Shown here: positions 38,201-60,253 of the stretch, piece after piece
Layout of the letters: each line of letters begins with the position of its first letter
Position numbering within the stretch: position 1 is the first letter of the stretch
Assembly: GCA_950097015.1 (NCBI GenBank)
Contig: CATNEN010000001.1
Span: forward strand, 26,846,001-26,910,000
DNA: 64,000 nucleotides
DNA from: Macrostomum hystrix
Taxonomy: Eukaryota > Animalia > Platyhelminthes
Direction of reading: 5' to 3'
Program-made: the position numbers and the translations under genes
The notes under the pieces: generated by a model
What the model was told of the DNA's origin: nothing
The model's database searches: none
What the model saw: the letters and a program-made list of their open reading frames with translations, nothing else

Positions 38201-38519
38201 CTGTGTTTTTATACATTTAGCGCACTGCTCATATCGGCATCTCATTAATTCTCACCAGAATTGTTCCGCCTTTCCATATCCTTTCGATATCCTCTTAGAA
38301 TCCCATTTTAGCATTCTCAGGACGCATTGTCGTAAAAAAGAATCAGGCAGTTTAAAGACTTCATTTACCACTCATCCACTCAGTGGATCTCATTGTTTGA
38401 TGACAATTACTGCATAGCGTTTAAATCTCAACTTTAAAAAAAGAAATATCTAAGCAGACGCTAATAGATAGAATAATGCAATTTAACCCATTAGGTATGT
38501 ACGTGTTCAACAATAATCC

Positions 38520-38686
38520 TAGCCACGCAGGTAGTAGTCTCAGCCACGCAGGTAACAGTCTCAGCCACACAGGTAGTAGTCTCAGCCACACAGGTATTAG
38601 TCTCAGCCACGCGGGTAGCAGTCTCAGCCACACAGGTAGTAGTCTCAGCCACACAGGTAGTAGTCTCAGCCACGCAGGTAGTAGTC
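38520..38686. repeat. 21-bp minisatellite (~8 copies) whose first unit is the last six codons plus stop of WSC gene 1A
   Basis: Minus strand GAC TAC TAC CTG CGT GGC TGA repeated. Confidence 0.9.
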
Positions 38687-39384
38687 TCCAACAATTCCGC
38701 TAAGGCTGGCAGGTGGGTAGGCGAACTTGAGCAGGTGGCACAGCTGCTGCTGCTCAGAGAAGATCACAGCCTGGCAGTCATCAAACTTCGCCTCACAGCG
38801 AATCAGGCAGTCCAGATGACTGTTTGCATCAGCAGTCCAGGAAGTAGTCTGCGATGCCGCGACAGTCAGATTGGCCAGCTGGGACTGCTTGAAGCACTTC
38901 TGCTCTGAAAGTAGTCAGGCTGCAATGTTCAGGCAAAGGCAGGCAGGTACTGATAGATGAGCTCAAGTGAGAATGGTGGCTCACTCGGATAGACCAGGGC
39001 GAACACCGAGTTTCTCCAAGGCCCGCCACACATCTGAGCTGGGTCTCCGCTGCAGGTTGAGCTGCAGTCGCTCTCATTGCAAGCCCCCTGAGATCCGTAG
39101 GCATTGCTGCAAAAGCACTGCTTGCCAATCTGAACTCCAAAGTAGGGGAAGCCGCCCAGAGAGCAGATGCTGCCGCAGAACGCATGCGACATGAAGCTGC
39201 CATCGGAAATGTAGGAATTGTATGGACTGAACTCTCCCAGCTGGCTGATTCCAGTTAGCCCTCCCAGATCCCTGCTCCAGCTGTCAATGTAGCAGCCGAG
39301 GTAGGAGAACTGGAGCGCTCTGCCAGCAACGCAGGTGAGCAGAGCCAGGCTGAAGAACTCAATTAGCTTCAGAGAAGGAAGCAT
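38666..39384 (-). CDS. Secreted WSC-domain + PAN/apple-like protein (gene 1, copy A), 2 exons, 212 aa
   Basis: Signal peptide MLPSLKLIEFFSLALLTCVAG; WSC motif YLGCYID...CGSIC...YFGVQIGKQCFC...CSSTCSGDPAQMCGG; exons 39384-38985 and 38904-38666; exon 2 has CLIRCE...CQAVIF...CHL. Confidence 0.85.
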
Positions 39385-39437
39385 TTTGCGAGTTTTAGCC
39401 AGCGGTTTGAAGAATTCAGCGCACTAGAAGCAGCCAG

Positions 39438-39446
39438 TTATTTATA
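39438..39446 (-). promoter_or_regulatory. TATA-box candidate for WSC gene 1A
   Basis: TATAAATAA about 55 bp upstream of the ATG. Confidence 0.45.
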
Positions 39447-39552
39447 CTGTCTAGTTTTTGCTCCGTATATTTACGCTCTATATAGACACACAGCATGCTA
39501 CTGTGAGTAGAAAGAATGTAGAAGAGTCAGGGCACATGTGTCATTGACTGAA

Positions 39553-39710
39553 GGTCGGGTGTTCGATTTCTGACTTCTAGCGATACACTTGACTCTGCAT
39601 TTCATCAGCTCACCCCAGCTATTAAATATCAGTACCAGCATTTGCTATGGGGTAATTGAGGGTGGTGTGGCGTCCCCCAAGTCCATGGACTGAACAGCCG
39701 TACGCAGCTT
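39553..39710 (+). mobile_element. Truncated copy of the tRNA-derived SINE (duplicated at 49720-49878)
   Basis: gttcgatttc B-box remnant; gtccatggactgaacagccgta shared with 13286-13307. Confidence 0.65.
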
Positions 39711-39762
39711 TCATAACAGTTAACATCCTCCCAGTGAAGCCGGTTCATCAAGTTACCCAGCT

Positions 39763-40541
39763 TCAAGGCTTCATCCAGACAAACTGAGCTTCGCTGGCAA
39801 TCTCTGCTGGCACAGCGTAGAACCTGAGCAGTCGACAAAGCCGGAGCGATGGCACGAAGGCGCAGGCTAGGCAGTCGTGGCTGCGATGGCATGCAGCCGC
39901 GCATTGGATTGAGCTGCTTGCCACAGCGTTTCTGTGGCTGACGGAGCTGCTTGAGGATGACATTCTCGGCATGGAGGCTGCGGACTGCTTTGTCAAGCTC
40001 GAGCCGTCTGTAAAAGATATTTTCCTCGCTGTGAATTGAGCTCCTTTTATCGGAAAGCTATTTCCTATACAATAGGTTTAGTAAAGTTAGAGGAGCACAC
40101 ACATTTCTAGTGTAGAGAAGTCTCAAATATAAAAAAAATCGGCCTTCAAAGATTTAGTCACAGATCACAGCACTCACTGGCTCCATACAGTAGTTCATAG
40201 ATGGAGTTTCTCCACTGGCCGCCGCACAGTTGTGTCGCATTACCTGCGCAGGCCAGGTAGCAGGTGCCAGGGCCCGCTGCTCCAAGGGAGCCATAGGCCG
40301 AGCCGCAGCAGCAGTAGAACCCCGCCTGGACGCCAAAGTATTGAAACCGGCCGTTGGAGCAAATATGGCTGCACATTTCTAGGGTCATTGCGGCACGGTT
40401 CGTCACGAATGGTATTTCCGGATCCGTTGAGTAGTGCCCCAGAGCGGTCACTCCTCGCAGTCCAAGTAGATCTCTGCTGGCACTATCAACGTAGCAGCCA
40501 ATATAGCGATATCTAAGGGGCTGCTGAGGATCATAAGCCAT
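39763..40541 (-). CDS. WSC-domain + PAN/apple-like protein (gene 2, copy A), 2 exons, ~202 aa; N-terminus uncertain
   Basis: YIGCYVD...MTLEMCSHIC...YFGVQAGFYCCC...CYLACAGNATQLCGG; exons 40541-40178 and 40007-39763 (phase 1); exon 2 has CAAAC...CLACAF...CRL. Confidence 0.8.
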
Positions 40542-40767
40542 GCTTCTACCGATGCATAACTAGAGCTCACATTCGATGTATGTTCCAATTAATTCCACCA
40601 GTATAAGGACCGTGTTGACACTTGAGAGTAGAGGCGAAATCAAACAGTGTAAAAATTACATTGGGCGTATAGACCTTTCGTAATTGTAGTAGGGAAGCGA
40701 CGAGGATAAACCATCAAGGACTACTATAGTAGTGATATACGTTTATAAGTAACTTTAGTAGTCTTTG

Positions 40768-40955
40768 TCCCCAGACTGATCAGCCAGTCTCCCAGATCCC
40801 CAGACTGATCATGCAGCCAGTCTCCCGGATCCCCAGACTGATCAGCCAGTCTCCCAGATCCCCATACTGATCAGCCAGTCTCCCAGATCCCCAGACTGAT
40901 CAGCCAGTCTCCCAGATCCCCAGACTGATCAGCCAGTTTCCAAGATCCCCAGACC
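40768..40955. repeat. 29-bp minisatellite, ~6 copies (single unit at 50935-50971 in copy B)
   Basis: ccagactgatcagccagtctcccagatcc. Confidence 0.9.
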
Positions 40956-41226
40956 TATAGAAGCACCAAAGCACCGAAGATCTAAAAGCTTGACCTAGAA
41001 CGGGTACGCGTATTTGCTGCGATATTTTTACATAGCATTTATTGAATTGACTAATAGAAGACGAAAAACTTGTTCCAAAATTTCATCTTAGAATTATCAT
41101 AGGGATCTTGGTCCACTTTTATTAACCCAAGTTTAGTCTCATTACAATGAAGCACTGATTTGTTCGTAACGAAACTTCTCAGTTCACACACTGATCACGC
41201 CCTGGACCGTTGCAGCCTTCATCGCA

Positions 41227-42969
41227 TTAGCCGATTAGCTGTGGCACAGGCAGTTCACAATTCCCATTTACTTCAATCCTGCCCGACTCCGCACAGGTGG
41301 CATAGCAGCGGCCGTTCACTTTGAAGGTCCGACACGCCACGCACATGTCTGGACCGGGTCCCCAGCATTCGTCCTGGCACTGAGCATCGCAGGCAGCGTT
41401 CCGGCAAATCTCGCTGCTGTCATCAAAGCTCAGGTTTTCTATTGTAATTTGAAATTCTTTGGTGACTTCCTGGATTTCTCGGATTCGATTGCTTGGATAC
41501 CAGGCTCTGCAAAGATCACTAATATCCCTAAGCACAAGGTAACGAGTATATTCCAAGCTAGCTAGTCCGAGGTATCTCGTCTTGAGATAATATATCACAA
41601 AGGAATCAGTGACGTATTTGATATTACGTAGGAATCGGAGATTGTCTAGTAAGTATGCAGATGTCTCAATTATTAGACTTCCGTAAAAGTACTCTAAATT
41701 CTCCAATACTCTAAGGTTTTCTAAGCTTCTTAAATCACTAGCATCCGCGACTAGATAAGAATTGGCCCTCCAAATCGAACACTGCTCAGTCCTCAATGAG
41801 TATGCTAAATTGACTGACATTTTTAAGGACACATTGCATGATTTGCAGGGCTTAGAACTAATTTTGTCAATACACTTTGTGCAAACCCCTTTGATGAGGA
41901 CTTCTGCTGACGGACACTCGATTAAACAGCGCCTGCCGTCAGAGCTAACAACAAAGGGCAGTGAGCACTTCTCTACGCAGATGTTGCCGATCTGTCGCCA
42001 AACAGTCACGCCAGTGCCATTACCACTAGCGGTACTAGTATTCGACGGACAGGATTCTCTACAGACACCATTGAACAATACTCCTCTCCGACAGGCGAAG
42101 CACTCGTTGGGCCGGTTTGAGCATCCGCCAAGGCAGTCGTCGTGGCAGCAGTCTTCTTGGCCAGTGTTCGGGTTATGGAAGCATAGGTTCGTAAATTTAC
42201 ACTTGCGCTTACGACACAGATGATTACTTTGGCAGCCATCAACACCGTCGGACCAGCAAGTTTGGTTATAAATTGGAGTTTGAGTACAATTAGCGTGACA
42301 GGAAAGCTCACGATTGCAAGTACGCCTAATCCTACCAAAGTTCCATTTACTTTTAATTAATTGTCTGCCTTCTTTAGTAATAATATAATCCACTTCATGA
42401 TCCAAATAGCGCTGGTATGGTTCTTGAAACAGGCTTTTCCAGTTGATGCTGTAGGACAGGTAGCAGTACAAGGTAGACATCATTGGCCCACCAGTATAAA
42501 CATTACTCTTTGTGATAGCTGTCAACTTAGGCATTTCCAGCTTGCTCATGTTCGGCGACATCCATATTAAAAATGAGTCGTGTTTAAATCTATTAAAAGG
42601 ATAACCTCGGATGGTGCGCAAGTTGCGGAAGGTGACGCGCTCAAGGCTGATGTACTTGATCACCAGTGATCCTCTGATCTCCACAATGGAGTCAAGAAAG
42701 TCTGTTTGCATGCCTCGAATTGCATCGTCCAGCGGCTTGTACGTTGATGGGTTCATACCTATATTGCCCAACTCCAAGTTGCCGAAAACATACTGGCAGC
42801 CAGCTACATAAGCCGTCAACTCCGCCTGCAAGCGACTAACATTTCTGTGGGTCTCATAGCCCTTGCTGGTTATACGTAAGGATCTGCAGATCCGGGTGCC
42901 AGAAGCCACATCGTCGTGTAACAACGGAAGCAAAAGAAGCAACCGAAAAACAAGCTGCAGGAAATTCAT
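41227..42969 (-). CDS. Intronless secreted receptor-L-domain/furin-like protein (EGFR ectodomain architecture L-CR-L-CR, no TM or kinase), 580 aa
   Basis: Signal peptide; L1 GCQYVFGNLEL...FLDSIVEIRGSLVI...FRNLRTIRG; furin-like CCHDDCLGGC...CFACR...GVCRESCP; L2 LENLEYFYGSLII...LRFLRNIKYV...LGLASLE; domain-IV-like CDAQCQDECWGPGPDMCVACR; stop follows with no hydrophobic segment. Confidence 0.9.
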   Translation of the reverse strand: MNFLQLVFRLLLLLPLLHDDVASGTRICRSLRITSKGYETHRNVSRLQAELTAYVAGCQYVFGNLELGNIGMNPSTYKPLDDAIRGMQTDFLDSIVEIRGSLVIKYISLERVTFRNLRTIRGYPFNRFKHDSFLIWMSPNMSKLEMPKLTAITKSNVYTGGPMMSTLYCYLSYSINWKSLFQEPYQRYLDHEVDYIITKEGRQLIKSKWNFGRIRRTCNRELSCHANCTQTPIYNQTCWSDGVDGCQSNHLCRKRKCKFTNLCFHNPNTGQEDCCHDDCLGGCSNRPNECFACRRGVLFNGVCRESCPSNTSTASGNGTGVTVWRQIGNICVEKCSLPFVVSSDGRRCLIECPSAEVLIKGVCTKCIDKISSKPCKSCNVSLKMSVNLAYSLRTEQCSIWRANSYLVADASDLRSLENLRVLENLEYFYGSLIIETSAYLLDNLRFLRNIKYVTDSFVIYYLKTRYLGLASLEYTRYLVLRDISDLCRAWYPSNRIREIQEVTKEFQITIENLSFDDSSEICRNAACDAQCQDECWGPGPDMCVACRTFKVNGRCYATCAESGRIEVNGNCELPVPQLIG

Positions 42970-43035
42970 TTTCTTAAATCACCTCTGCAGTGCTTTCTTT
43001 CTATTTTGATTCCCAGCTCTGAAGCTTTTCACTTC

Positions 43036-43043
43036 TTTAAATA
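43036..43043 (-). promoter_or_regulatory. TATA-like element upstream of the L-domain gene A
   Basis: TATTTAAA about 65 bp upstream of the ATG; also present in copy B. Confidence 0.35.
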
Positions 43044-43414
43044 CCAATTGAATTAAATGCGACTCGTCGAAACAAAATTCTTTCGCAGGCAATTTTTTCA
43101 ACAAAAAATAACACCACTTTCCATATTTTGCCCGTTTCTCTGACTCTGCAGAAAAACTTACTTAAAGCATATTTGTGTCGCTTGCTTTTCAAAAAAGGAT
43201 ATATGAAAATCAATCAATAATCACAAGTCATATGACTTCAGCTTGCTTTTTTGGCTCTCAAATTCCAGGAGTTAACTGTGCTCAACTCGCAATGTAAGAA
43301 GCGACGAAAGACTAAATTAAAGTCAGACATTTTGTTTTAAAAATCAAGAAAATGAAATCCAATGGTTCTATTTATAGCTAAGATAAATAGAAGCTAAGAT
43401 AAGAGATAATATAT

Positions 43415-43806
43415 ATGGATCGTCGGTAACGCGCGCATCCTGGACGCCTTGATCGCTCGGGGACAACTCGACCTCGACGGTGTACCTGCAGCACAACGTA
43501 CGAATTGACGAGCTGGTCGAGGCAGGCTATGGCACCACGAGAATCATGCGATTCGACGACGCATTCAGAAGAGAGCAGCATGCCGGCATGCAGGACTGGG
43601 CACGACCGAGTTTCTTGCTAGTGACAAGGCACCTCATCGCTCCACAGCAGACCCAGCAACATGCCCGCATACGCCCGGAAAAGAATATTCCGGTAGTCCA
43701 GGGAGCACCTGTCTGTCTCAAGTTCAGTACCTGCGCTCAGATCGCGGCGAGGCGACACACTCGGCAAAAAACGAAATGCGGAGCCGCCAGTCATGGCTCT
43801 GGCTAT
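43415..43806 (+). mobile_element. Fragment of the DIRS/Ngaro-like relic (copy A; empty site for the LINE inserted in copy B)
   Basis: Near-identical to 53443-53740 plus 55253-55356, which is collinear with a DIRS/Ngaro-type RT fragment. Confidence 0.55.
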
Positions 43807-44357: not shown

Positions 44358-44990
44358 TGTAAGAGGAGGTTGTCAGAAAAGTTATTTGCATTTAATTATG
44401 ACTCACTATATGACCTCGTCCTCCGAGCTGAAACGCTGGCCACGCATGGTTTCCTTGATGCGAGGGAAAAGAAAGAAGTCGCACGGACTCAGATAATCGC
44501 AAGGCAACAATCCAGGAATTTCATGCCCTCTCGTCGGTTGGATGTGCACATGGCGACCCGCCGACCTCGCTGATCGTCGGTAAGGAGATGTGGGACCCAC
44601 TTGGCACAAATCTTGCGCATGTCGAGGTCCTCAACCAAGATCTTGTGAATTGAGTCGTGGGACACCCCAATGACGTCAGACAGCTGCCGTGTGGTCAGCC
44701 GCCGGTCCAGCACCACAGCTGCCTCCACCTGACTCACCAGGTTATCGGTCCGAGCACTTTTTGGCCTTCCAACGCGTGGCTCGTCTTCCAGGTCTTCCTT
44801 GCAGTTTTGAATGGCCATACACAACCCAGCGGCCAATTGTCTCATCCGATAGGCTTGAGTCTCCCAGGGTCTCGTTCGTTTCTTCAAAAATTTTGGTTGG
44901 CGAATGCCCCCTCGAAAAATTGGGGAGAAATAGGACAAGATACGGAAGAAATACGAGGCGATAAAAGTAAACGAAAAAGAATTTCAAGTA
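44358..44990 (-). mobile_element. Defective mariner transposon (frameshifted, most of the catalytic domain deleted)
   Basis: DLEDEPRVGRP...DRRLTTRQLS...KICAKWVPHLLT and LSPCDFFLFPRIKETMRGQRFSSEDEV in different frames; TIR-like gaggttgtcagaaaagtt near 44365. Confidence 0.9.
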
Positions 44991-45603: not shown

Positions 45604-47320
45604 AGGGTTTGGCGGAAGCCACACGTTTTCTGCAGTCGAAAGAGCAGTCAATCTGGGTATCGGGCGCTTTGGCTCGATTTGGCACTCCCCTGGAAAGATT
45701 CCCCTTTCCCCTTTCCCCTTTCCCCTTCCCCAGTGTTTCCCCTGGAAACACTGAAGAGTTTGATGCAGACAATATGAGCTCCTTCGCAGCAACGGCCGGC
45801 AATGGGGAACATTGTACGCCGTGCTTCATCCTAGCCGTGGGCCCGCACGCTAGCGATGCTGCATGTTGCTCGAGCTTTTCAAAGACTCAGCCAGCCGGAT
45901 TGACAGCGTCCAACCTGTCAATTTGTTGTGCTGTTTGGTGAAATTTCATATTGCTATGAGCACAACTCCGAAACCAGCTGATGAGGTTTGCTGCCCTACC
46001 GATCAATTTTGTCAGCACATCCGAGAGGCAGGCGGCTGGCCGAATGAACTTGTTAAAAGTCGATGCTGCAGTGGATATTGGCCCGACTTAGTTGGCTACA
46101 CTGACTGCCTCTCTTCATCCCTTCCAGGTTGCCGCCATTAATCAAGAATGTCTTTGTTGTATCTGATGCCCTGCAGATGTAATGCCAGCTATAATTCAAT
46201 CTACTTTGAAAGCTTTTTAACAGGCTACTTATGTTTATCTGAGAGTCAGTCAGTCAAGGCCCATCTGACGGATATAAATAAAGTGCAATTTCGAAGTATA
46301 GAGTGATCTCTATAATAATTACATTTATTTTTACTCTTGTTTTAAAATGAGTTCTTGAATGCCTAAATTTTGCGTCTTGCTTGCTTACTAACAGTAGTAT
46401 TGAGTGTGAGAGTTTGAGCTTGAGCTCTTGTTCAGATCAAATCAGATGTATCCGACTTTTTAACGACTAAAGCATATTGTCTGTCCAGAAAAAGGAACAA
46501 GATAAGGAGAGGCAGACACAAAGAGCATTGAAGTACATAATTCAAGTTGCTCTGCTGATCTGTAGCCTTCTGTCTAGATCAATGTGTAAAGTAGCTCCTG
46601 CAAGTACGAGTACATAGTCGGTGTTTTCACTTGGTTGCTAAAAACTTTCCCTTGCATGCGGGGTTGAAAACATGACCACTAAAATGACAAAGATACGGAA
46701 AGCTTGGAAAACAATGTTTTTTATTGGTAAAAATCGGAATAAAATATTGTAGAGAGATTTTTTACTCATTTTAAGCTTAAAAGTTCCAAGAGACGTAGAA
46801 AACGTCTTTACAATTGGATTTCCTCCCTTTGTCTCACGACTCAGCATACCAAAGCCATTTTCTACCCATAGCAATGGAATAACGTTTTTACTCAGAACTG
46901 CTAATTTCAGCAGGGATCTGGAAGTTTAACATGCTAGCTTTTCAGAAAAAATTTTTTTTTCCGAATTTCTATGAGTTGCTTTTTTCTGGGCTTTCACTAC
47001 GCTTGCTGCCGAACCCAGGCACTGTTTTACTCACAATTGTTTGCCGAAAACAGCAAAAAATATGTTTTTTTCTATGGGATCATTATGCGTAAATTTGCTA
47101 GGTTTTTCAAACATTAACTGTAAAACTTCGATTCTACAAAAAAGTATCAGGCAGTTTAAAGACTTCATTTACCACTCATCCACTCAGAGGATCTCATTGT
47201 TTGATGACAACTACTGCATAGCTTTTAAATCTCTGCTTTTTTAAGAAATATCTAAGTAGACGCTAATAGATAGAATAATGCAATTTAACCCATAAGGTAT
47301 GTACGTGTTCAACAATAATC

Positions 47321-48853
47321 CTAGCCACGCAGGTAGTAGTCTCAGCCACGCAGGTAGCAGTCTCAGCCACACAGGTAGTAGTCTCAGCCACACAGGTAGT
47401 AGTCTCAGCCACACAGGTTGTAGTCTCAGCCACACAGGTAGTAGTCTCAGCCACACAGGTTGTAGTCTCAGCCAGACAGGTAGCAGGCTCAGCCACGCAG
47501 GTAGTAGTCTCAGCCACACAGGTTGTAGTCTCAGCCAGACAGGTAGCAGGCTCAGCCACGCAGGTAGTAGTCTCAGCCACGCGGGTAGCAGTCTCAGCCA
47601 CACAGGTAGTAGTCTCAGCCACACAGGTAGTAAACTCAGCCACACAGGTAGTAAACTCAGCCACACAGGTAGTAGTCTCAGCCACGCGGGTAGCAGTCTC
47701 AGCCACACAGGTAGTAGTCTCAGCCACGCGGGTAGCAGTCTCAGCCACACAGGTAGTAGTCTCAGCCACACAGGTAGTAAACTCAGCCACACAGGTAGTA
47801 AACTCAGCCACACAGGTAGTAGTCTCAGCCACGCGGGTAGCAGTCTCAGCCACACAGGTAGTAGTCTCAGCCACGCGGGTAGCAGTCTCAGCCACACAGG
47901 TAGTAGTCTCAGCCACACAGGTAGTAAACTCAGCCACACAGGTAGTAAACTCAGCCACACAGGTAGTAGTCTCAGCCACGCGGGTAGCAGTCTCAGCCAC
48001 ACAGGTAGTAGTCTCAGCCACACAGGTAGTAAACTCAGCCACACAGGTAGTAAACTCAGCCACACAGGTAGTAGTCTCAGCCACGCGGGTAGCAGTCTCA
48101 GCCACACAGGTAGTAGTCTCAGCCACACAGGTAGTAAACTCAGCCACACAGGTAGTAAACTCAGCCACACAGGTAGTAGTCTCAGCCACACAGGTAGTAG
48201 TCTCAGCCACGCGGGTAGCAGTCTCAGCCACACAGGTAGTAGTCTCAGCCACACAGGTAGTAGTCTCAGCCACACAGGTTGTAGTCTCAGCCACACAGGT
48301 AGTAGTCTCAGCCACACAGGTTGTAGTCTCAGCCACGCAGGTAGTAGTCTCAGCCACACAGGTAGTAGTCTCAGCCACACAGGTAGTAGTCTCAGCCACA
48401 CAGGTAGTAGTCTCAGCCACACAGGTAGTAGTCTCAGCCACACAGGTAGTAGTCTCAGCCACACAGGTAGTAGTCTCAGCCACACAGGTTGTAGTCTCAG
48501 CCACGCAGGTAGTAGTCTCAGCCACACAGGTAGTAGTCTCAGCCACACAGGTAGTAAACTCAGCCACACAGGTAGTAAACTCAGCCACACAGGTAGTAAA
48601 CTCAGCCACACAGGTAGTAGTCTCAGCCACACAGGTAGTAGTCTCAGCCACACAGGTAGTAGTCTCAGCCACACAGGTAGTAGTCTCAGCCACACAGGTA
48701 GCAGGCTCAGCCACGCAGGTAGTAGTCTCAGCCACGCAGGTAGTAGTCTCAGCCACACAGGTATTAGTCTCAGCCACGCGGGTAGCAGTCTCAGCCACAC
48801 AGGTAGTAGTCTCAGCCACACAGGTAGTAGTCTCAGCCACGCAGGTAGTAGTC
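47321..48853. repeat. 21-bp stop-codon minisatellite expanded to ~73 copies
   Basis: gtagtagtctcagccacacag units; ~8 copies at the paralogous site. Confidence 0.97.
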
Positions 48854-49551
48854 TCCAACAATGCCGCTAAGGCTGGCAGGTGGGTAGGCGAACTTGAGCA
48901 GGTGGCACAGCTGCTGCTGCTCAGAGAAGATCACAGCCTGGCAGTCATCAAACTTCGCCTCACAGCGAATCAGGCAGTCCAGATGACTGTTTGCATCAGC
49001 AGTCCAGGAAGTAGTCTGCGATGCCGCGACAGTCAGATTGGCCAGCTGGGACTGCTTGAAGCACTTCTGCTCTGAAAGTAGTCAGGCTGCAATGTTCAGG
49101 CAAAGGCAGGCAGGTACTGATAGATGAGCTCAAGTGAGAATGGTGGCTCACTCGGATAGACCAGGGCGAACACCGAGTTTCTCCAAGGCCCGCCACACAT
49201 CTGAGCTGGGTCTCCGCTGCAGGTTGAGCTGCAGTCGCTCTCATTGCCAGCCCCCTGAGATCCGTAGGCATTGCTGCAGAAGCACTGCTTGCCAATCTGA
49301 ACTCCAAAGTAGGGGAAGCCGCCCAGAGAGCAGATGCTGCCGCAGAACGCATGCGACATGAAGCTGCCATCGGAAATGTAGGAATTGTATGGACTGAACT
49401 CTCCCAGCTGGCTGATTCCAGTTAGCCCTCCCAGATCCCTGCTTCAGCTGTCAATGTAGCAGCCGAGGTAGGAGAACTGGAGCGCTCTGCCAGCAACGCA
49501 GGTGAGCAGAGCCAGGCTGAAGAACTCAATTAGCTTCAGAGAAGGAAGCAT
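48833..49551 (-). pseudogene. WSC+PAN gene 1, copy B, nonsense mutation
   Basis: TGG (Trp) of copy A is TGA at 49446-49444. Confidence 0.8.
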
Positions 49552-49929
49552 TTTGCGAGTTTTAGCCAGCGGTTTGAAGAATTCAGCGCACTAGAAGCAG
49601 CCAGTTATTTATACTGTCTAGTTTTTGCTCCGTATATTTACGCTCTATATAGACACACAGCATGCTACTGTGAGTAGAAAGAATGTAGAAGAGTCAGGGC
49701 ACATGTGTCATTGACTGAAGGTCGGGTGTTCGATTTCTGACTTCTAGCGATACACTTGACTCTGCATTTCATCAGCTCACCCCAGCTATTAAATATCAGT
49801 ACCAGCATTTGCTATGGGGTAATTGAGGGTGGTGTGGCGTCCCCCAAGTCCATGGACTGAACAGCCGTACGCAGCTTTCATAACAGTTAACATCCTCCCA
49901 GTGAAGCCGGTTCATCAAGTTACCCAGCT

Positions 49930-50707
49930 TCAAGGCTTCATCCAGACAAACTGAGCTTCGCTGGCAATCTCTGCTGGCACAGCGTAGAACCTGAGCAGTC
50001 GGCAAAGCCGGAGCGATGGCACGAAGGCGCAGGCTAGGCAGTCGTGGCTGCGATGGCATGCAGCCGCGCATTGGATTGAGCTGCTTGCCACAGCGCTTCT
50101 GTGGCTGACGGAGCTGCTTGAGGATGACATTCTCGGCATGGAGGCTGCGGACTGCTTTGTCAAGCTCGAGCCGTCTGTAGAAGATATTTTCCTCGCTGTG
50201 AATTGAGCTCCCTTTATCGGAAAGCTATTTCCTATACAATAGGTTTAGTAAAGTTAGAGGAGCACACACATTTCTAGTGTAGAGAAGTCTCAAATATAAA
50301 AAAAATCGGCCTTCAAAGATTTAGTCACAGATCACAGCACTCACTGCTCCATACAGTAGTTCATAGATGGAGTTTCTCCACTGGCCGCCGCACAGTTGTG
50401 TCGCATTACCTGCGCAGGCCAGGTAGCAGGTGCCAGGGCCCGCTGCTCCAAGGGAGCCATAGGCCGAGCCGCAGCAGCAGTAGAACCCCGCCTGGACGCC
50501 AAAGTATTGAAACCGGCCGTTGGAGCAAATATGGCTGCACATTTCTAGGGTCATTGCGGCACGGTTCGTCACGAATGGTATTTCCGGATCCGTTGAGTAG
50601 TGCCCCAGAGCGGTCACTCCTCGCAGTCCAAGTAGATCTCTGCTGGCACTATCAACGTAGCAGCCAATATAGCGATATCTAAGGGGCTGCTGAGGATCAT
50701 AAGCCAT
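49930..50707 (-). pseudogene. WSC+PAN gene 2, copy B; 1-bp deletion at the end of exon 1 puts exon 2 out of frame
   Basis: GGAGCA|gtgagt versus GGAGCCA|gtgagt in A; spliced frame reads ACG GCT CGA GCT TGA. Confidence 0.7.
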
Positions 50708-51237
50708 GCTTCTACCGATGCATAACTAGAGCTCACATTCGATGTATGTTCCAATTAATTCCACCAGTATAAGGACCGTGTTGACACTTGAGAGTAGAGG
50801 CGAAATCAAACAGTGTAAAAATTACATTGGGCGTATAGACCTTTCCTAATTGTAGTAGGGAAGCGACGAGGATAAACCATCAAGGACTACTATAGTAGTG
50901 ATATACGTTTATAAGTAACTTTAGTAGTCTTTGTCCCCAGACTGATCAGCCAGTCTCCCAGATCCCCAGACCTATAGAAGCACCAAAGCACCGAAGATCT
51001 AAAAGCTTGACCTAGAACGGGTATTTGCTGCGATATTTTTACATGGCATTTATTGAATTGACTAATAGAAGACGAAAAACTTGTTCAAAAATTTCATCTT
51101 AGAATTATCATAGGGATCTTGGTACACTTTTATTAACTCAAATTTAGTCTCATTACAATGAAGCACTGATTTGTTCGTAACGAAACTTCTCAGTTCACAC
51201 ACTGATCACGCCCTGGACCGTTGTAGCCTTCATCGCA

Positions 51238-52985
51238 TTAGCCGATTAGCTGTGGCACAGGCAGTTCACAATTCCCATTTACTTCAATCCTGCCCGACTC
51301 CGCACAGGTGGCATAGCAGCGGCCGTTCACTTTGAAGTTCCGACACGCCACGCACATGTCTGGGCCGGGTCCCCAGCATTCGTCCTGGCACTGAGCATCG
51401 CAGGCAGCGTTCCGGCAAATCTCGCTGCTGTCATCAAAGCTCAGGTTTTCTATTGTAATTTGAAATTCTTTAGTGACTTCCTGGATTTCTCGGATTCGAT
51501 TGCTTGGATACCAGGCTCTGCAAAGATCACTAATACCCAGAAGATTAAGGTCAGGAGTATATTCCAAGCTAGCTAGTCCCAGGTATCTCGTCTTGAACCA
51601 GCGAATGTCAAAGTAATCAGTGACGTATTTGATATTACGTAGGAATCGGAGATTGTCTGGTAAGTAATCAGTTGTCTCAATTATTAGACTTCCGTGAAAG
51701 TACTCTAATTTCTCGAATGCTCTAAGGTTTCCGAAGCTTCTTAAATCACTAGCATCCGCGACTAGATAAGAAAAATCGGCCTTCCAAATCGAACACTGCT
51801 CAGTCCTCAATGAGTATGCTAAATTGACTGACATCAGTAAGGAGTCGACATTGCACGATTTGCAGGGCTTAGAGCTAATTTTCTCAATACACTTTGTGCA
51901 AACTCCTTTGATAGGGACTTCTGCTAATGGACACTCGATTAAACAGCGCCTGCCGTCAGAGCTAACAACAAAGGGCAGTGAGCACTTCTCTACGCAGATG
52001 TTGCCGATCTGTCGCCAAACAGTCACGCCTGTGCCATTTCCACTAGCGGTACTAGTATTCGACGGACAGGATTCTCTACAGACACCATTGAACAATACTC
52101 CTCTCCGACAGGCGAAGCACTCGTTGGGCCGGTTCGAGCAACCTCCAAGGCAGTCGTCGTTGCAGCAGTCTTCTTGACCAGTGTTCGGGTTATGGAAGCA
52201 TAGGTTCGTAGTGTTACCCCCTTGCGCTTACGACACAGATGATTACTTTGGCAGCCATCGACACCGTCGGACCAGCATTTTTGGCCATAAATTGGAGTTT
52301 GAGTACAATTAGCGTGACAGGAAAGCTCACGATTGCAGGTACGCCTAATCCTATCAAAGTTCCATTTTTTGTTTCTAATTCTGCCATCTTTAGTAAAAAT
52401 ATAATCCACTTCATGATCAAAATAGCGCTGGTATGGTTCTTGAAACAGGCTTTTCCAGTTGATGCTGTAGGACAGGTAGCAGTACAAGCTAGACTGCATT
52501 GACCCCAATAGATATACATTACTCTTTGTGATAGCTGTCAACTTGGGCATTTCCAGCTTGCTCATGTTCGGCGACTTCCATATTAAAAATTTGTCCTTTT
52601 TAAATCTATTAACAGGGTAACCTCGGATGGTGCGCAAGTTGCGGAAGGTAACGCGCTCAAGGCTGATGTACTTGATCACCAGTGATCCTCTGATCTCCAC
52701 AATGGAGTCAAGAAAGTCTGTTTGCATGCCTCGAATTGCATCGTCCAGCGGCTTGTACGTTGATGGGTTCATACCTATATTGCCCAACTCCAAGTTGCCG
52801 AAAACATACTGGCAGCCAGCTACATAAGCCGTCAACTCCGCCTGCAAGCGACTAACATTTCTGTGGGTCTCATAGCCCTTGCTGGTTATATGTAAGGATC
52901 TGCAGATCCGGGTGCCAGAAGCCACATCGTCGTGTAACAACGGAAGCAAAAGAAGCAACCGAAAAACAAGCTGCAGGAAATTCAT
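51238..52985 (-). pseudogene. L-domain/furin-like gene copy B, frameshifted near 52211-52221 (or a sequencing error)
   Basis: ORFs 52985-52023 and 52095-51238 together cover the paralogue; 10 nt gtgttacccc replace 8 nt aatttaca of copy A. Confidence 0.75.
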
Positions 52986-53740
52986 TTTCTTAAATCACCT
53001 CTGCAGTGCTTTCTTTCTATTTTGATTCCCAGCTCTGAAGCTTTTCACTTCTTTAAATACCAATTGAATTAAATACGACTCGTCGAAAATAAAATTCTTT
53101 CGCAGGCAATTTTTTCAACAAAAAATAACACCACTTTCCATATTTTGCCCGTTTCTCTGACTCTGCAGAAAAACTTACTTAAAGCATATTTGTGTCGCTT
53201 GCTTTTCAAAAAAGGATATATGAAAATCAATCAATAATCACAAGTCATATGACTTCAGCTTGCTTTTTTGGCTCTCAAATTCCAGGAGTTAACTGTGCTC
53301 AACTCGGCAATTCGCAATGTAAGAAGCGACGAAAGACTAAATTAAAGTCAGGCATTTTTGTTTTAAAAATCAAGAAAATGAAATCCAATGGTTCTATTTA
53401 TAGGTAAGATAAATAGAAGCTAAGATAAGAGATAAGATATATGGATCGTCGGTAACGCGCGCATCCTGGACGCCTTGATCGCTCGGGGACAACTCGACCT
53501 CGACGGTGTACCTGCAGCACAACGTACGAATTGACGAGCTGGTCGAGGCAGGCTATGGCACCACGAGAATCATGCGATTCGACGACGCATTCAGAAGAGA
53601 GCAGCATGCCGGCATGCAGGACTGGGCACGACCGAGTTTCTTGCTAGTGACAAGGCACCTCATCGCTCCACAGCAGATCCAGCAACATGCCCGCATACGC
53701 CCGGAAAAGAATATTCCGGTAGTCCAGGGAGCACCTGTCT

Positions 53741-55252
53741 TGACTTACTTGACTTAGCGGCAGGGAGCCTCCATGACGTACGCAGCGAGGAGGCGGCCGG
53801 TGCCGCCCATATCGCTAACCCCTGGCAGCCGGACGGCCTCCAGCGAGGCGGTGCCGCTCAGGGTGGTCCGTCGGTCAGTTCCGCCGCGTGATCTCCCTCG
53901 CCATAGGCTGGGAAGAAATCAGCTCGGCCGGTATCGCGGAGGAAGTGGGCGAGCTGTGGAATGCTCTCGGGCGAGCAGGCTTCGACTAGGGTCGGCACCG
54001 GCCCGAGATGTTTTAGCCTAGCCCGGGTGAAGGTCGGGCAGTGGCAGATGAAATGCTCGGTGTTTTCACGTCCGGAGCAGCAGAAGGGACACGTTTCCTC
54101 AGGCACGTGGCCTTGGAGGTAGCGGTGTCTGGTGAAGCAGCCATATCCCGAAAGGGCCATAGTGACTGCTCTAAGGTCTCTGCGGTTAAGCCTGAGTAAG
54201 GCCTTACGCAGGTTACTAGAGGGGGTTGGCACCGCAGCCCTGGACTGGCGACAGTTCAGGGTGCTAGACCACCTCCTTCGGTGTTGGGTCTCCATCCAGC
54301 GGTTGATGTTGGAGTTTACCACAGAAATAGGGATCGGGGCCTCCGGGCCCGGGCCCAACAGGGAGCTGGCTGCTCCAGCCTTTGCAAGCTGGTCCGCCAT
54401 CTCATTCCCTGTGAGCCCGGCGTGCCCAGGGATCCACGTCAGCTCCACCTTGTTAGACTGTGCCAATCCGTTTAACTGGGTGTGGCAGTCTAAGGTGGTT
54501 CTGGAACGAGAGGTGCAGCGACTGAGGGCCTTGAGAGCTGCTTGACTGTCGGAGTGAAAGAAAATCCTTCGTCCAGTCAGCTGCCTCTGGCGCAGTTCAG
54601 CCGCACAGAGACTGATGGCGAGCATTTCGTTTTGGAAAACGCTTGAGCTCTTGCCACAGTGTTGGGAGTGGGTCCAGAGGACCTCAACTCCCGAGGCGAC
54701 GGACACTCCGAATCCCGAATTACCGTTCATCAGAGAGCCGTCAGTGTAGCAGTGGACTGCTGGGTCATCCCAGCAGTCCTTAACCTCATTGCGAGGAAGG
54801 ATGCTGACCTTGTACCTGTGGCTCCGGAGTAAAGTGGCCGGGGCCCCATCCGAGAGGATGTTGAGCCCTCCACACTCGCCCAGAGTTTTCAGGCATAGGT
54901 CAGAGTGAGGCAGAAGGGAGCGCTTCGGGAAGGCTCGCAGCTTCTGGAAGGAGACCCCCGCATCTAGAAGACGCCGGGTGGACTTTGCCGCTTCCCCTTG
55001 ATATAAATGTCAATGGGTGTAGCGTAGAGGAAGGCATTCATGCCTTCGAAGGGAGTGGAAGGTGGGGCGCCCAGCGTCATACGACAGGCTCTGCCCTGCA
55101 CCCTATAGAGTGCCTCCAGGTTTTTCTGGATGCCCATGGCACCGGCCCAGATGAGGCCAGCATACGCAACGGACGGTCTGATGATCGCCGTGTAAATCCA
55201 CCAAAGGTTCTTGGGGGTTAGCCCCCAAGTGGTGCCCACGGCACGCCTGACT
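53741..55252 (-). mobile_element. 5'-truncated RNase H-containing non-LTR retrotransposon (I-group, LOA-like)
   Basis: 14-bp TSD gggagcacctgtct (53727-53740, 55253-55266); TWGL..WIYTAIIRP thumb region; RNase H YTDGS...SVFQNE...SDSQAAL...[19 protein letters not shown]; CPFC..E..EH..C finger; taagtcaagtaagtca tail. Confidence 0.92.
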
Positions 55253-58600: not shown

Positions 58601-60253
58601 GGTCCACCCTGGGGCGGTGGCAGAAGCCCTTGATCTCGCCGAGACCGGTGCCTAAAGTGTGGTACTTGGCAGGAATCCAATCTGGCATAGGTGGCATACC
58701 TGAAGCCTCGTTACCCGAGCTAATAGTGAAGATTTGATGGCCGGAAGGTCCGAGGACCTTGCAGTCGAGTTTGTCCATCAGGTCGATGCCCATCAGGTCG
58801 TCGCCGTCCATCACAATTGTGAAGGTGAACAACGGAAGCTGAACGCCGTCGAACTCGACCCTGGCATCGATCTCGCCGGCGACGCTGATACTGGAGCCGT
58901 TGTAGGAAAGCAGCTTCTTGTCGCACGGGCGCAGAGGAATTTTAGATCCGAAGATTTTGCGGCTTGTCTCCATGCTGAGGATGGAGACTTTGGCGGCTGT
59001 GTCCACCAGTAACGGGATGCTGTGACCATTGATTCTTATGCTGGCCCTCTTGTATTGGCCTTTGTGGCTCGACCCGACAGCGAAGATACTCTGCTGTCTG
59101 GAGCTGTCTATCTCGACGCCTTGAATCTTCTTTTGGCCTGAGGTCGGTGCCGTCGTGCTGCTCTTGCACACCTTGGCGAAGTGGTTGAGCCTCCCGCACT
59201 TCGTGCACGCCTTGCCTCGTGCCGCACAGCGCGGATCACTGCCTGTGCGGTGGCCTCGCTGGCCGCAGTGCGAGCAGCAGAACTGGTTCTGCTGACCCGT
59301 CTGGCGCTGCTTGGCGTCGTAGGAAGCTCTCTTAAAGTTGATCTTCTTGATGCTGTCGTCGGCTGCTGTCTTGCCAGTCAGCGACTTCTCACTGTGGACC
59401 GCCATTTCCACCTGGGCTGCAATTTGGATTGCCCCGCCCAGCGTGAGCTCCTTCTCAAGTAGGAGTCTTTCGCGCACCTTTGAGGACGAGGTGCCAAAGA
59501 TCAGCTGGTCCAGGATGAGGTCGTCATGGAGGACTCCAAACTGGCAGTCCTTGGCGGCATGGCGCAGATTTGCCACAAAGGCTTGCACGCCTTCGGCGCT
59601 TCGCTGGACGCACTTCCGGAATTCGTGCCTCTTGGCATACACGCTCACTGCTGGCTGGAAGTGCTGCTTCAGGAGATCGCATGCCGCTGCTAGTGTTGTC
59701 GGAGCCGTTTCCTGGTCAGCCGAGAGAGTCCGGTAGATTCGTACTCCTTCGCGCCCAAGGCAGTGGGTGAGCAGCGCAATCTTCCTGGCTTCTTGCAGGC
59801 TATCGATTCCGGATGCTAGCAGGTAGGTGTCAAACTCAGCGGCCCAGATTTCCCACGAAACTGCAGGTGTTCCTGGGTTGTCCAGAAATGGTGGAGGTTC
59901 TCTGAGGTTCAGGCGTAGTGCTGGCGCTGTGGCATTCTCAGTGCTACCCATTTCCGATTGGCTCAACTGGCTGACTTGCAGTTGTGAGTGCCGTATGAGT
60001 GCGAAAGTCGCTTAGTGGGCCTGGCTGCCGTGAGTTGATTGGCTGGACTGCGCTGGTTTGGGGGGTTTGCTCTAACCCCTGCTTGCGATGCCAGTGTTGT
60101 GGCTGCTAGCCAAATAAGCGAGGCGAGGCCAAGTCCAGTTAACCAAGGGTGAGGGTGCTCTCTCGCGTAGCGAGAGCCGTGTATATATATTATTGAACCT
60201 CACATGTACAATGATTACATAAGTACACTATGAGCAAATGTGCATTCACAACA
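55623..60253 (-). mobile_element. Full-length Ty3/Gypsy (Mag-like) LTR retrotransposon, 4631 bp
   Basis: 159-bp TG..CA LTRs at 55623-55781 and 60095-60253 (identical by eye); 5-bp TSD gtcgg; PBS TGGCATCGCAAGCAGGG; PPT ggaggggggatga; PR-RT-RH-IN order. Confidence 0.96.
55912..59951 (-). CDS. Gag-Pol polyprotein of the Gypsy element, frameshifted in the integrase core near 56548
   Basis: Two CCHC knuckles, protease VDTAA, RT LRLCVDLR/MPFG/YQDD, RNase H CDSS/EKE/TDH, integrase HQGH..C..C, TDNGPQF; QQNGGVERFN continues in another frame up to LRRSERHRAPP. Confidence 0.9.

What the first reader, a model, noticed from the sequence alone, without database searches (positions are those of the whole stretch)
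41500..42610. Hypervariable L-domain faces between otherwise near-identical paralogues
Seen: about 2 kb of WSC genes and spacers differ between A and B at only roughly ten positions by eye, and the first ~120 and last ~90 codons of the L gene are almost identical. The middle has clustered radical replacements and in-frame indels: PFNRFKHDSFLIWM/PVNRFKKDKFLIWK, YTGGPMMST/YLLGSMQSS, EGRQLIKSK/DGRIRNKK, NVSLKM/NVDSLLM, RANSY/KADFSY, TSAYLLD/TTDYLPD, DSFVIYYLK/DYFDIRWFK, RYLVLRD/PDLNLLG. Structural Leu/Ile/Phe/Cys are largely kept while the alternating positions change. Established: this alternation marks the exposed beta-sheet of L-domains (the ligand-binding surface) and is the pattern of diversifying LRR immune receptors. 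Inference: positive selection and/or patchwise gene conversion generates binding diversity on an EGFR scaffold. The paralogous region is 51520-52625.
Basis: partly seen in the sequence, partly recalled or inferred. Interest (0 to 1): 0.85.

Follow-up and report, generated by a model that had tools for sequence, protein, structure and literature searches.

The report
Variable secreted EGF-receptor ectodomain gene pair
Two neighbouring flatworm genes for secreted, kinase-less EGF-receptor ectodomains are almost identical except on their binding domains, because short stretches have been swapped among about twenty sister genes whose binding faces evolve under diversifying selection.

Summary
Copy A (41227-42969, minus strand) and copy B (51238-52985) sit in a duplicated 5.4-kb unit. 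The unit's flanks differ by about 0.5%; CDS nt 336-1509 differs by about 8%, in clustered patches.

- One indel is 2 bp and breaks B's frame in this assembly.
- CR1 carries a mostly synonymous patch.
- A and B belong to about 23 single-exon copies, 17 of them intact besides A.

The contrast is not fast evolution since a recent duplication. Synonymous divergence in the tract (0.05-0.27) equals family level. 58 of 96 A/B substitutions have both states in other paralogues. L1, CR1 and L2 have incompatible trees (AU p≤1e-5). This is mosaic gene conversion plus a few local indel bursts.

Across the family, diversifying selection on L1/L2 strand positions is strong (ω 3.5-7.8). Five of nine mappable EGF-contact positions of human EGFR fall in the selected class.

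B's tract sequences occur exactly in independent public runs, so it is not an assembly chimera. B's frameshift patch does not occur in them.

The closest public proteins are Macrostomum lignano EGFR kinases (47%). The scan had already noted this family from another copy (s1-262284). Function is unknown; I infer soluble variable binding proteins.

The parts
41227..42969 (-). Copy A: intact single-exon CDS of 580 aa. It has a signal peptide, L1, CR1 (furin-like), L2 and the first CR2/domain IV module, with no TM segment and no kinase.
   Evidence: ORF. Pfam hits Recep_L_domain 57-180, Furin-like 224-375 and GF_recep_IV 527-562. A family profile aligns residues 27-577 to ErbB4 ectodomain residues 4-542. 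Foldseek top hits are EGFR/ErbB4 ectodomains.
42325..42894 (-). A, L1 domain (codons 26-215). Selected sites are 32, 36, 54, 66, 68, 69, 72, 75, 103, 105, 106, 129-131, 134, 158-160, 192, 194, 203, 208 and 211.
   Evidence: M2a posterior ≥0.95. AF2 pLDDT is about 80-87 here.
41815..42324 (-). A, CR1 (codons 216-385). This is a family-wide near-invariant framework. Here A is identical to several other paralogues, while B carries a private, mostly synonymous patch.
41410..41814 (-). A, L2 domain (codons 386-520). Selected sites are 382, 383, 407, 409, 412, 433, 435, 458, 460, 461, 476, 479, 481, 482 and 511.
41461..42634 (-). Divergent mosaic tract in A (CDS nt 336-1509).
41179..41226 (-). Fossil of the next CR2 disulfide module directly after A's stop codon (reads CDEGCNGPGRDQC).
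   Evidence: Translation after the stop, compared with RTK paralogue L021.
51238..52985 (-). Copy B: the same gene, 94% identical in DNA to A. In this assembly a 2-bp insertion splits it into two ORFs (52023-52985 and 51238-52095).
52218..52220 (-). Site of B's 2-bp insertion (GGGGG run) that shifts the frame. Contigs of 4 public runs do not show it; they lack the 2 bp here.
   Evidence: tables 3 and 4.
51472..52650 (-). Divergent mosaic tract in B.
   Evidence: Exact B-type contigs lie at 51637-51763, 52248-52449 and 52295-52628 in runs X2 and X5.
38334..43714 (.). Duplicated unit A: minisatellite, two WSC-domain ORFs (38929-39384 and 40158-40541, minus strand) and the L gene.
47138..53740 (.). 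Duplicated unit B. It has the same content, with the 21-bp minisatellite expanded to about 1.6 kb (47241-48870).

Best explanation
A and B are tandem members of a macrostomid-flatworm-specific family. The assembly holds about 23 copies, of which 17 besides A are intact, on contigs C1, C15 and C39. The genes are single-exon and encode secreted EGF-receptor ectodomains (L1, CR1, L2 and the first CR2 module). They derive from the worm's own intronless EGFR kinases by a stop codon at a disulfide-module boundary.

The family keeps an almost invariant framework: signal peptide, cysteine-rich regions and the hydrophobic core of each L-domain rung. The exposed x positions of the Φ-x-Φ-x-x-Φ strands of L1 and L2 are hypervariable and under diversifying selection. 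Φ is a conserved hydrophobic residue and x an exposed one. These strands are homologous to the sheets that clamp EGF in EGFR.

The sharp A/B contrast is a mosaic of ancestries. A 5.4-kb unit was recently duplicated or homogenised, leaving flanks about 0.5% apart. Inside the CDS, tracts of tens to a few hundred bp have been exchanged with other family members by gene conversion. These tracts bring in synonymous and replacement differences alike. At least one patch (EGRQLIKSK/DGRIRNKK) arose locally by indels and multi-nucleotide change.

Shown: the anatomy, the mosaic, the ω>1 sites and the reality of B's tracts in other samples. Inferred: the proteins are soluble binders whose L1/L2 faces recognise diverse or fast-evolving partners. 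These partners could be EGF-like ligands as decoys or, more likely given the hypervariability, non-self or mate-derived molecules. Conversion among copies would shuffle binding-face variants.
For: Architecture and fold:
- RTK relatives have a TM segment and a kinase in one ORF. A fossil CR2 module follows A's stop codon.

Mosaic ancestry:
- A/B pS is 0.07-0.14 per domain and up to 0.27 per 30-codon window, against 0 in codons 1-86 and 551-580. There are 21 purely synonymous codon differences, all between codons 112 and 539.
- Of 96 A/B substitutions, 58 have both states in other paralogues, 22 are private to B and 16 private to A.
- The sliding nearest neighbour switches along the gene. B is closest to L005/L002 at nt 451-537 and to L015/L013 at nt 655-892. 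A is 100% identical to L010/L014/L005/L003 at nt 685-1072.
- A GENECONV-like permutation test gives A-L014 and B-L002 fragments with p<0.0005.
- A PHI-like test gives 0 of 1000 permutations.
- AU tests reject each segment's tree on the other segments (p 1e-5 to 1e-7 between L1 and L2).

Selection:
- M2a against M1a gives 2ΔlnL of 104 for L1 (ω2 3.5), 139 for L2 (ω2 5.9) and 39.5 for CR1.
- All five L1/L2 sub-blocks of 55-76 codons, each with its own tree, stay significant (p 4e-7 to 1e-21, ω2 3.8-7.8).
- 41 sites have posterior ≥0.95, in an i, i+2, i+3 pattern on successive rungs.
- A and B differ at 14 of 39 selected sites against 34 of 450 others (p=3e-6).
- Five of nine EGFR EGF-contact equivalents are selected (p=3e-4). 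The contact list is from PMC8838133.

Reality and taxonomy:
- B's L1 and L2 tracts are present exactly in contigs of runs from three studies.
- The closest public proteins are M. lignano EGFR kinases at 47%. No 580-aa relative exists among 1.84 billion cluster representatives.
- The RTK paralogue is 72% identical to M. lignano's EGFR.
Against: - Recombination and multi-nucleotide changes inflate site-model likelihood-ratio tests. My M1a/M2a code fixes relative branch lengths and is not codeml.
- I had no 3D coordinates. 'Same face' rests on strand register, rung periodicity and a profile alignment to ErbB4, carried over to EGFR by motif equivalence recalled from memory.
- The AF2 model is only moderate (pLDDT 66) and CR1 is poorly modelled.
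- For the densest strand patches (nt 1367-1384 and 1427-1445) neither the A nor the B version has a donor closer than 4-6 mismatches. Conversion there is inferred, not shown.
- Contigs were short, so the tracts are not physically linked to the flanks in independent data.
- Transcription is only suggested: three runs cover the CDS but not the flanks, and their RNA label is a guess.
- No binding partner, expression site or phenotype is known.
Confidence: 0.72

Rival explanations
1. Pure positive selection on new point mutations after a very recent duplication produced the A/B differences.
For: Differences are enriched at the family's selected sites. One patch, A 42349-42381, has no relative elsewhere in the genome. 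There are 38 private substitutions.
Against: Synonymous divergence in the tract is 0.05-0.27, against about 0.005 in the flanks. 60% of the differences are shared with other paralogues. pN/pS for the A/B pair is only 0.88-1.27. The CR1 patch is mostly synonymous.
Confidence: 0.05
2. A and B are old tandem paralogues. Their ends and flanks were recently homogenised by long conversion tracts, and selection removed conversions that would overwrite the binding faces. This is the reverse direction of the main history.
For: Central synonymous divergence equals or exceeds the family mean. Earlier notes on this genome's EGFR kinases describe homogenised cassettes under divergent ectodomains (not tested here). 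The densest patches have no extant donors.
Against: Inside the tract, A and B share stretches found in no other copy: nt 508-597 and 628-684 are 0.96-0.98 identical to each other against ≤0.85 to any other copy. These alternate with diverged stretches, which fits sister genes that later received patches. The first L1 strands (codons 29-75), hypervariable in the family, are identical in A and B, so binding faces were not spared there.
Confidence: 0.2
3. Assembly artefact: the centre of B (or A) was mis-joined or collapsed from another family member.
For: The family is repetitive. B's CR1 patch with the 2-bp insertion (52030-52260) is not seen in any of 4 public runs.
Against: Contigs identical to B over its L1 tract (52295-52628 in X5; 52248-52449 in X2) and its L2 tract (51637-51763) occur in runs of different studies. 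Part of the tract is A/B-specific and found nowhere else in the genome. The assembly is chromosome-scale, with 42 contigs.
Confidence: 0.05
4. Relaxed constraint: B is a decaying pseudogene and the differences are neutral decay.
For: B has a frameshift in this assembly. B-private changes (22) slightly exceed A-private ones (16).
Against: Differences cluster at exactly the positions that vary among the 17 intact copies analysed (A plus 16 paralogues), and cysteines and core residues are kept. A-private changes are almost as many. Decay would not be 20 times denser in the centre than in the flanks. Other samples carry B-type tracts with an in-frame, A-like CR1.
Confidence: 0.06

Closest known systems
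EGFR/ErbB receptor ectodomain (human EGFR, ErbB4, Drosophila EGFR) and its soluble isoforms
   Same: It has the same L1-CR1-L2-CR2 order. A profile match to ErbB4 runs over residues 27-577. The fold matches 3ltf, 3u7u, 5wb7 and 1ivo. The variable strands are those that bind EGF in EGFR.
   Different: - It has no TM segment and no kinase, and is truncated after the first CR2 module by a genomic stop codon, not by splicing.
- There are about 20 paralogues with hypervariable binding faces.
- The domain III loop that carries EGFR D355/F357 is absent in the profile alignment. Canonical EGF binding is therefore doubtful.
Macrostomum EGFR kinase paralogues (M. lignano PAA79361.1 and relatives; this genome's C9 and C3 copies)
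   Same: These are the closest relatives, at 47-49% identity over the whole ectodomain, and are also intronless. Barberán et al. 2016 (PMC4914847) report 8 EGFRs in M. lignano.
   Different: They keep CR2, the TM segment and the kinase. The secreted 580-aa family has no counterpart in public protein sets.
C. elegans IRLD / HPA-1, HPA-2 proteins (insulin/EGF-receptor L-domain family)
   Same: This is an expanded, clustered family of kinase-less L-domain proteins. Some members lie in hyper-divergent regions. HPA-1 and HPA-2 modulate EGF signalling (PMC9262388).
   Different: Its origin is independent: the flatworm family's nearest relatives are flatworm EGFR kinases and not nematode proteins. 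Per PMC9262388, IRLDs have only weak homology to InsR/EGFR. The flatworm proteins keep the full L1-CR1-L2 ectodomain.
Diversifying tandem receptor families built on leucine-rich β-solenoids (plant R-gene LRRs, lamprey VLRs)
   Same: Hypervariable x positions lie on a solenoid sheet over an invariant framework. The genes sit in tandem arrays and exchange sequence between copies. This comparison rests on established knowledge and was not tested here.
   Different: The scaffold is different (an EGFR L domain). No somatic assembly exists and no cassette donors were found in the genome. No immune role is known.

Membership tests
EGFR/ErbB ectodomain superfamily | N-terminal receptor L domain (L1) | tested here: met
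   Pfam PF01030 hit at residues 57-180, E=3e-16.
EGFR/ErbB ectodomain superfamily | Furin-like cysteine-rich region (CR1) between two L domains | tested here: met
   PF00757 hit at residues 224-375. The cysteines are invariant in 23 sequences.
EGFR/ErbB ectodomain superfamily | Second L domain (L2 / domain III) | tested here: met
   Pfam gave no hit, but the family profile aligns residues 386-520 to ErbB4 domain III. Foldseek aligns the full length to EGFR ectodomains.
EGFR/ErbB receptor tyrosine kinase (full receptor) | Complete domain IV, transmembrane helix and tyrosine kinase domain | tested here: not met
   The ORF stops after the first CR2 module and only a fossil of the next module follows. 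The RTK paralogues keep these parts.
EGFR/ErbB ligand-binding competence | Conserved EGF-contact residues (L14, Y45, L69, L98, V350, D355, F357, L382, Q384, F412, I438) | tested here: not met
   Five of nine mappable positions are hypervariable in the family, and the D355/F357 loop is missing in the alignment. The contact list is from PMC8838133.
Diversifying-selection receptor repertoire (LRR-receptor-like pattern) | ω>1 concentrated on exposed strand positions over a conserved framework | tested here: met
   M2a against M1a is significant in all L1/L2 sub-blocks with ω2 of 3.8-7.8. 41 sites lie in rung register. The caveat is that recombination inflates these tests.
Diversifying-selection receptor repertoire (LRR-receptor-like pattern) | Sequence exchange between tandem paralogues | tested here: met
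Diversifying-selection receptor repertoire (LRR-receptor-like pattern) | Demonstrated recognition of variable ligands or an immune or reproductive role | not testable with these tools
   No expression-site or binding data were available.
C. elegans IRLD/HPA family | Common descent with the nematode irld genes | tested here: not met
   An exhaustive HMMER search puts M. lignano EGFR kinases first (47% and 35%), with everything else at ≤32-38% over parts. The origin is therefore independent.
Processed or decaying pseudogene (copy B only) | Disabling mutation present and fixed | tested here: inconclusive
   The 2-bp insertion is in the assembly. The only contigs covering that site in 4 runs lack it.

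The most novel reading that the evidence does not exclude
Macrostomid flatworms have turned the EGF-receptor ectodomain into a germline-encoded repertoire of soluble recognition proteins. This would be functionally analogous to LRR-based variable receptors. Binding-face cassettes on L1 and L2 would be shuffled among about 20 loci by gene conversion and kept diverse by an arms race with pathogens or with mating partners.
Probability: 0.35. Interest if true: 0.8.

Novelty: new variant of a known kind. Interest (0 to 1): 0.62.

Why it matters
EGF receptors are normally among the most conserved signalling receptors in animals. Here the ectodomain was cut loose from its kinase, multiplied to about twenty secreted copies and diversified exactly on the ligand-clamping sheets. 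If confirmed, the L-domain β-solenoid has been recruited independently as a variable binding scaffold, as LRRs were in plants and jawless fish.

The family would offer a natural library of EGFR-fold binders with different specificities. It would also bear on flatworm biology, since EGFR signalling controls stem-cell differentiation there and Macrostomum is a model for sexual conflict.

The case is also a methodological warning. A 'hypervariable island between near-identical paralogues' can come from mosaic conversion and need not reflect accelerated evolution. Synonymous sites tell the two apart.

Tried and rejected
- **Word-indexed protein search.** It found only fish ErbB proteins at 23-25% identity. 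The exhaustive search showed the nearest relatives are M. lignano EGFR kinases.
- **Hidden donor cassettes, as for VLRs.** Only the known family copies match B's L2 patch, and only A and B match the L1 patch. I rejected a cassette mechanism.
- **Linkage of the L gene to WSC genes.** WSC ORFs lie within 1.5 kb only at A and B, with a weak match at L015. I did not pursue the idea of a conserved three-gene module.
- **Splicing of the L ORF to downstream exons.** No joints were seen, but short contigs cannot exclude it.
- **Mapping on 3D coordinates.** This was not possible. The structure tool returns no coordinates and CR1 is poorly modelled, so I used strand register and homology.
- **Domain III strand with EGFR F412.** My motif-based alignment and the HMM alignment disagree on the register, so F412 was left out of the contact test.
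- **Literature search on 'receptor L domain' with positive selection.** It returned nothing relevant.
- **Complex prediction.** I did not use it because no candidate partner is known.
- **Read laying.** It could cover only B, since one call was allowed, so A's tract was not checked in reads.
Full report
**What is there**

The window is a eukaryotic chromosome segment, G000:C1:26846001-26910000, from a 220-Mb assembly in 42 contigs. A 5.4-kb unit is present twice, as A 38334-43714 and B 47138-53740. Each unit holds a 21-bp minisatellite (much longer in B), two WSC-domain ORFs and, on the minus strand, one long ORF.

In A that ORF is intact (41227-42969, 580 aa). Pfam finds a receptor L domain at residues 57-180, a furin-like cysteine-rich region at 224-375 and the start of growth-factor-receptor domain IV at 527-562. 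A profile of the family aligns residues 27-577 to ErbB4 ectodomain residues 4-542. An AlphaFold2 model (mean pLDDT 66; L1 about 83, L2 about 75, CR1 poor) has EGFR and ErbB4 ectodomains as its best Foldseek matches (3ltf, 3i2t, 3u7u, 5wb7, 1ivo).

The protein has a hydrophobic N-terminal signal sequence, no transmembrane segment and no kinase. Directly after the stop codon the frame still reads as the next CR2 disulfide module (CDEGCNGPGRDQC). This matches the continuation in the kinase-bearing paralogues. The gene is therefore a truncated EGF receptor that encodes only a secreted ectodomain.

**Checking the observation**

- The WSC genes and spacers have 15 mismatches in 2285 bp.
- CDS codons 1-111 have one difference and codons 504-580 have three.
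- Between CDS nt 336 and 1509 there are 96 substitutions and four indels, grouped in 34 clusters.
- All quoted peptide pairs are present.

Three points were missed:
- One indel is 2 bp, inside a GGGGG run at B about 52218-52220. It breaks B into two ORFs.
- The first half of CR1 carries a patch whose differences are mostly synonymous.
- The pair is part of a large family.

**The family**

A six-frame search of the whole assembly finds 17 further full-length copies, 16 of them intact and one (L003) with a premature stop. They are 78-84% identical to A in protein. There are also four partial copies. All lie in several tandem clusters on C1, C15 and C39.

More distant relatives (47-49%) on C9 and C3 are complete EGF receptors with a transmembrane helix and a tyrosine kinase in a single ORF. 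The word-indexed search found only fish ErbB proteins at about 25%. An exhaustive HMMER search of 1.84 billion cluster representatives puts two Macrostomum lignano receptor tyrosine kinases first (47% and 35%) and finds no 580-aa relative.

The C9 kinase of this genome is 72% identical to the M. lignano protein. The organism is therefore a macrostomid flatworm other than M. lignano, as earlier notes of this scan also say. Barberán et al. 2016 (PMC4914847) list eight EGFRs in M. lignano and mention no secreted family.

**Why A and B differ in the middle**

If the differences were new mutations fixed by selection after a recent duplication, synonymous sites in the tract should be as similar as the flanks, about 0.5%. 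They are not.
- Nei-Gojobori pS is 0.073 in L1, 0.138 in CR1 and 0.074 in L2. It reaches 0.27 per 30-codon window, which equals or exceeds the family mean in the same windows.
- 21 codons differ only synonymously, and all of them lie between codons 112 and 539.
- pN/pS for the pair is 0.88, 0.23 and 1.27 in the three domains.
- Of the 96 substitutions, 58 have both states present in other paralogues, 22 are private to B and 16 private to A.

A sliding nearest-neighbour scan shows a fine mosaic:
- At nt 121-350, 508-597 and 628-684, A and B are nearly identical to each other and unlike all other copies.
- At nt 451-537, B is closest to L005/L002. B's YLLGSMQSS patch is one mismatch from L002.
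- At nt 655-892, B is closest to L015/L013, while A is 100% identical to L010, L014, L005 or L003.
- In L2, both copies have closer relatives elsewhere.

Formal tests agree:
- A GENECONV-like permutation test finds significant shared fragments for A-L014 (nt 849-1073) and B-L002 (nt 11-154), both p<0.0005.
- A PHI-like test gives 0 of 1000 permutations.
- AU tests show that L1, CR1 and L2 each reject the others' trees.
- Other neighbouring copies behave the same way. L004 and L005 are identical in L1 but belong to different clades in L2.

Not everything is imported. The patch EGRQLIKSK/DGRIRNKK (A 42349-42381) lies in a stretch that exists only in A and B in the whole genome. It looks like local indel and multi-nucleotide change in an A-rich run. 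The densest strand patches in L2 have no donor closer than 4-6 mismatches. No short donor cassettes exist elsewhere.

The direction of the history is not fully resolved. The two options are recent duplication followed by patch import, and old paralogues with homogenised ends. The A/B-specific stretches interleaved with diverged ones favour the first.

**Selection in the family**

I wrote M0/M1a/M2a codon site models (F3x4 frequencies, relative branch lengths fixed from IQ-TREE). I ran them on the 17 intact copies (A plus 16 paralogues) per domain, each with its own tree.
- M2a beats M1a with 2ΔlnL of 104 in L1 (ω2=3.5, 27% of sites), 139 in L2 (ω2=5.9, 13%) and 39.5 in CR1.
- Recombination inflates such tests, so I repeated them on seven sub-blocks of 55-85 codons with separate trees.
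- All five L1/L2 blocks remain significant (p from 4e-7 to 1e-21, ω2 3.8-7.8). CR1 is weaker.

41 sites have posterior ≥0.95. They fall in the register Φ-x-Φ-x-x-Φ on successive β-solenoid rungs, where Φ is a conserved hydrophobic residue and x an exposed one. In L1 these are 66/68/69, 103/105/106, 131/134 and 158-160. In L2 they are 407/409/412, 433/435, 458/460/461, 479/481/482 and 511. A and B differ at 14 of 39 such sites against 34 of 450 others (p=3e-6).

I mapped the sites to EGFR through the ErbB4 profile alignment and the EGFR/ErbB4 motif equivalence, which I recalled from memory. The EGF-contact list is as summarised in PMC8838133.

| EGFR contact residue | Equivalent in A |
|---|---|
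| Y45 | N69 |
| L69 | Y106 |
| L382 | I433 |
| Q384 | E435 |
| I438 | V479 |

All five of these are in the selected class, which is 5 of 9 mappable contacts against 40 of 491 sites overall (p=3e-4). L14 and Q16 equivalents are conserved. The loop bearing D355/F357 is absent. The variable faces are thus the homologues of the ligand-clamping sheets, but the canonical EGF-binding residues are not kept.

**Reality in other data**

Contigs of four public runs from three studies were laid on B.
- B's L1 tract (for example 52295-52628 in X5 and 52248-52449 in X2) and L2 tract (51637-51763) occur with no differences. The tracts are therefore real and fairly stable between samples.
- Over B's CR1 patch (52030-52260) every run shows only A-like letters and lacks the 2-bp insertion. 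The frameshift allele is either private to the assembled individual or an error.
- Three of the runs cover the CDS but not the flanks. This suggests RNA, but their library type is a guess.
- No splice joints were seen.
- The contigs are too short to link tracts to flanks.

**Comparison, novelty and mechanism**

The proteins work like a soluble EGFR ectodomain in architecture, but they fail the membership test for a signalling receptor and for conserved EGF contacts. The nearest analogue in concept is the nematode IRLD/HPA family of kinase-less L-domain proteins (PMC9262388). That family is of independent origin.

The evolutionary pattern matches that of LRR-type diversifying receptors: an invariant solenoid framework, hypervariable exposed strand positions, tandem arrays and inter-paralogue conversion. 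I found no description of such an EGFR-derived family in the paper searches I ran. An earlier follow-up of this scan had already described the family from another copy (s1-262284). I reproduced its main claims here: about twenty copies, variable binding faces and a fossil after the stop codon.

My best reading (confidence 0.72) is the mosaic-conversion plus family-wide diversifying-selection model given above. The function as a repertoire of soluble binders is inference.

Noticed in passing
window 38421-38703 and 47241-48870: A 21-bp minisatellite is open in several frames (for example ...LSHTGSS... repeats). It is about 280 bp in unit A and expanded to about 1.6 kb in unit B.
   Followed up: partly
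window 40806-40960: A has about 155 bp between the WSC gene and the L gene that B lacks. This is the only large indel inside the duplicated unit.
   Followed up: no
window 38929-39384, 40158-40541 and 49096-49359, 50321-50707: Two WSC-domain ORFs lie downstream of each L gene. Among the other paralogues, a WSC match within 1.5 kb was found only (and weakly) at L015, so the pairing seems specific to this duplicated unit.
   Followed up: partly
window 44406-44938; 53858-54730; 56463-59966: There are three transposon remains. A mariner-like HTH fragment lies between the two units. An RNase H (non-LTR type) ORF sits right after unit B. A 1167-aa Ty3/gypsy-type pol ORF carries protease, RT, RNase H and integrase.
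   Followed up: partly
window 6752-7639 and 25516-26646 (minus strand): These are exons of a VPS13-like gene, with Pfam VPS13_M and VPS13_N matches below the gathering score.
   Followed up: no
L004/L005 (G000:C1:26505334-26517072) and L013/L014 (C1:27351562-27362826): Other neighbouring copies repeat the pattern. L004 and L005 are identical in L1 but fall in different clades in L2. L013 and L014 are an inverted pair that is nearly identical throughout.
   Followed up: partly
L021-L024 (G000:C9:1.03-1.09 Mb), L026-L028 (C3:4.45-4.81 Mb): On C9 there are tandem intronless full EGFR kinases. On C3 there are copies with the ectodomain and TM segment whose ORF ends soon after the membrane. Their L-domain strand positions also vary between copies.
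   Followed up: partly
window 52030-52260: B's CR1 patch has seven substitutions plus the 2-bp insertion, several of them private and synonymous. It is absent from contigs of four public runs, which read like A there. It may be an individual-specific conversion from an unsampled donor or a local assembly error.
   Followed up: partly
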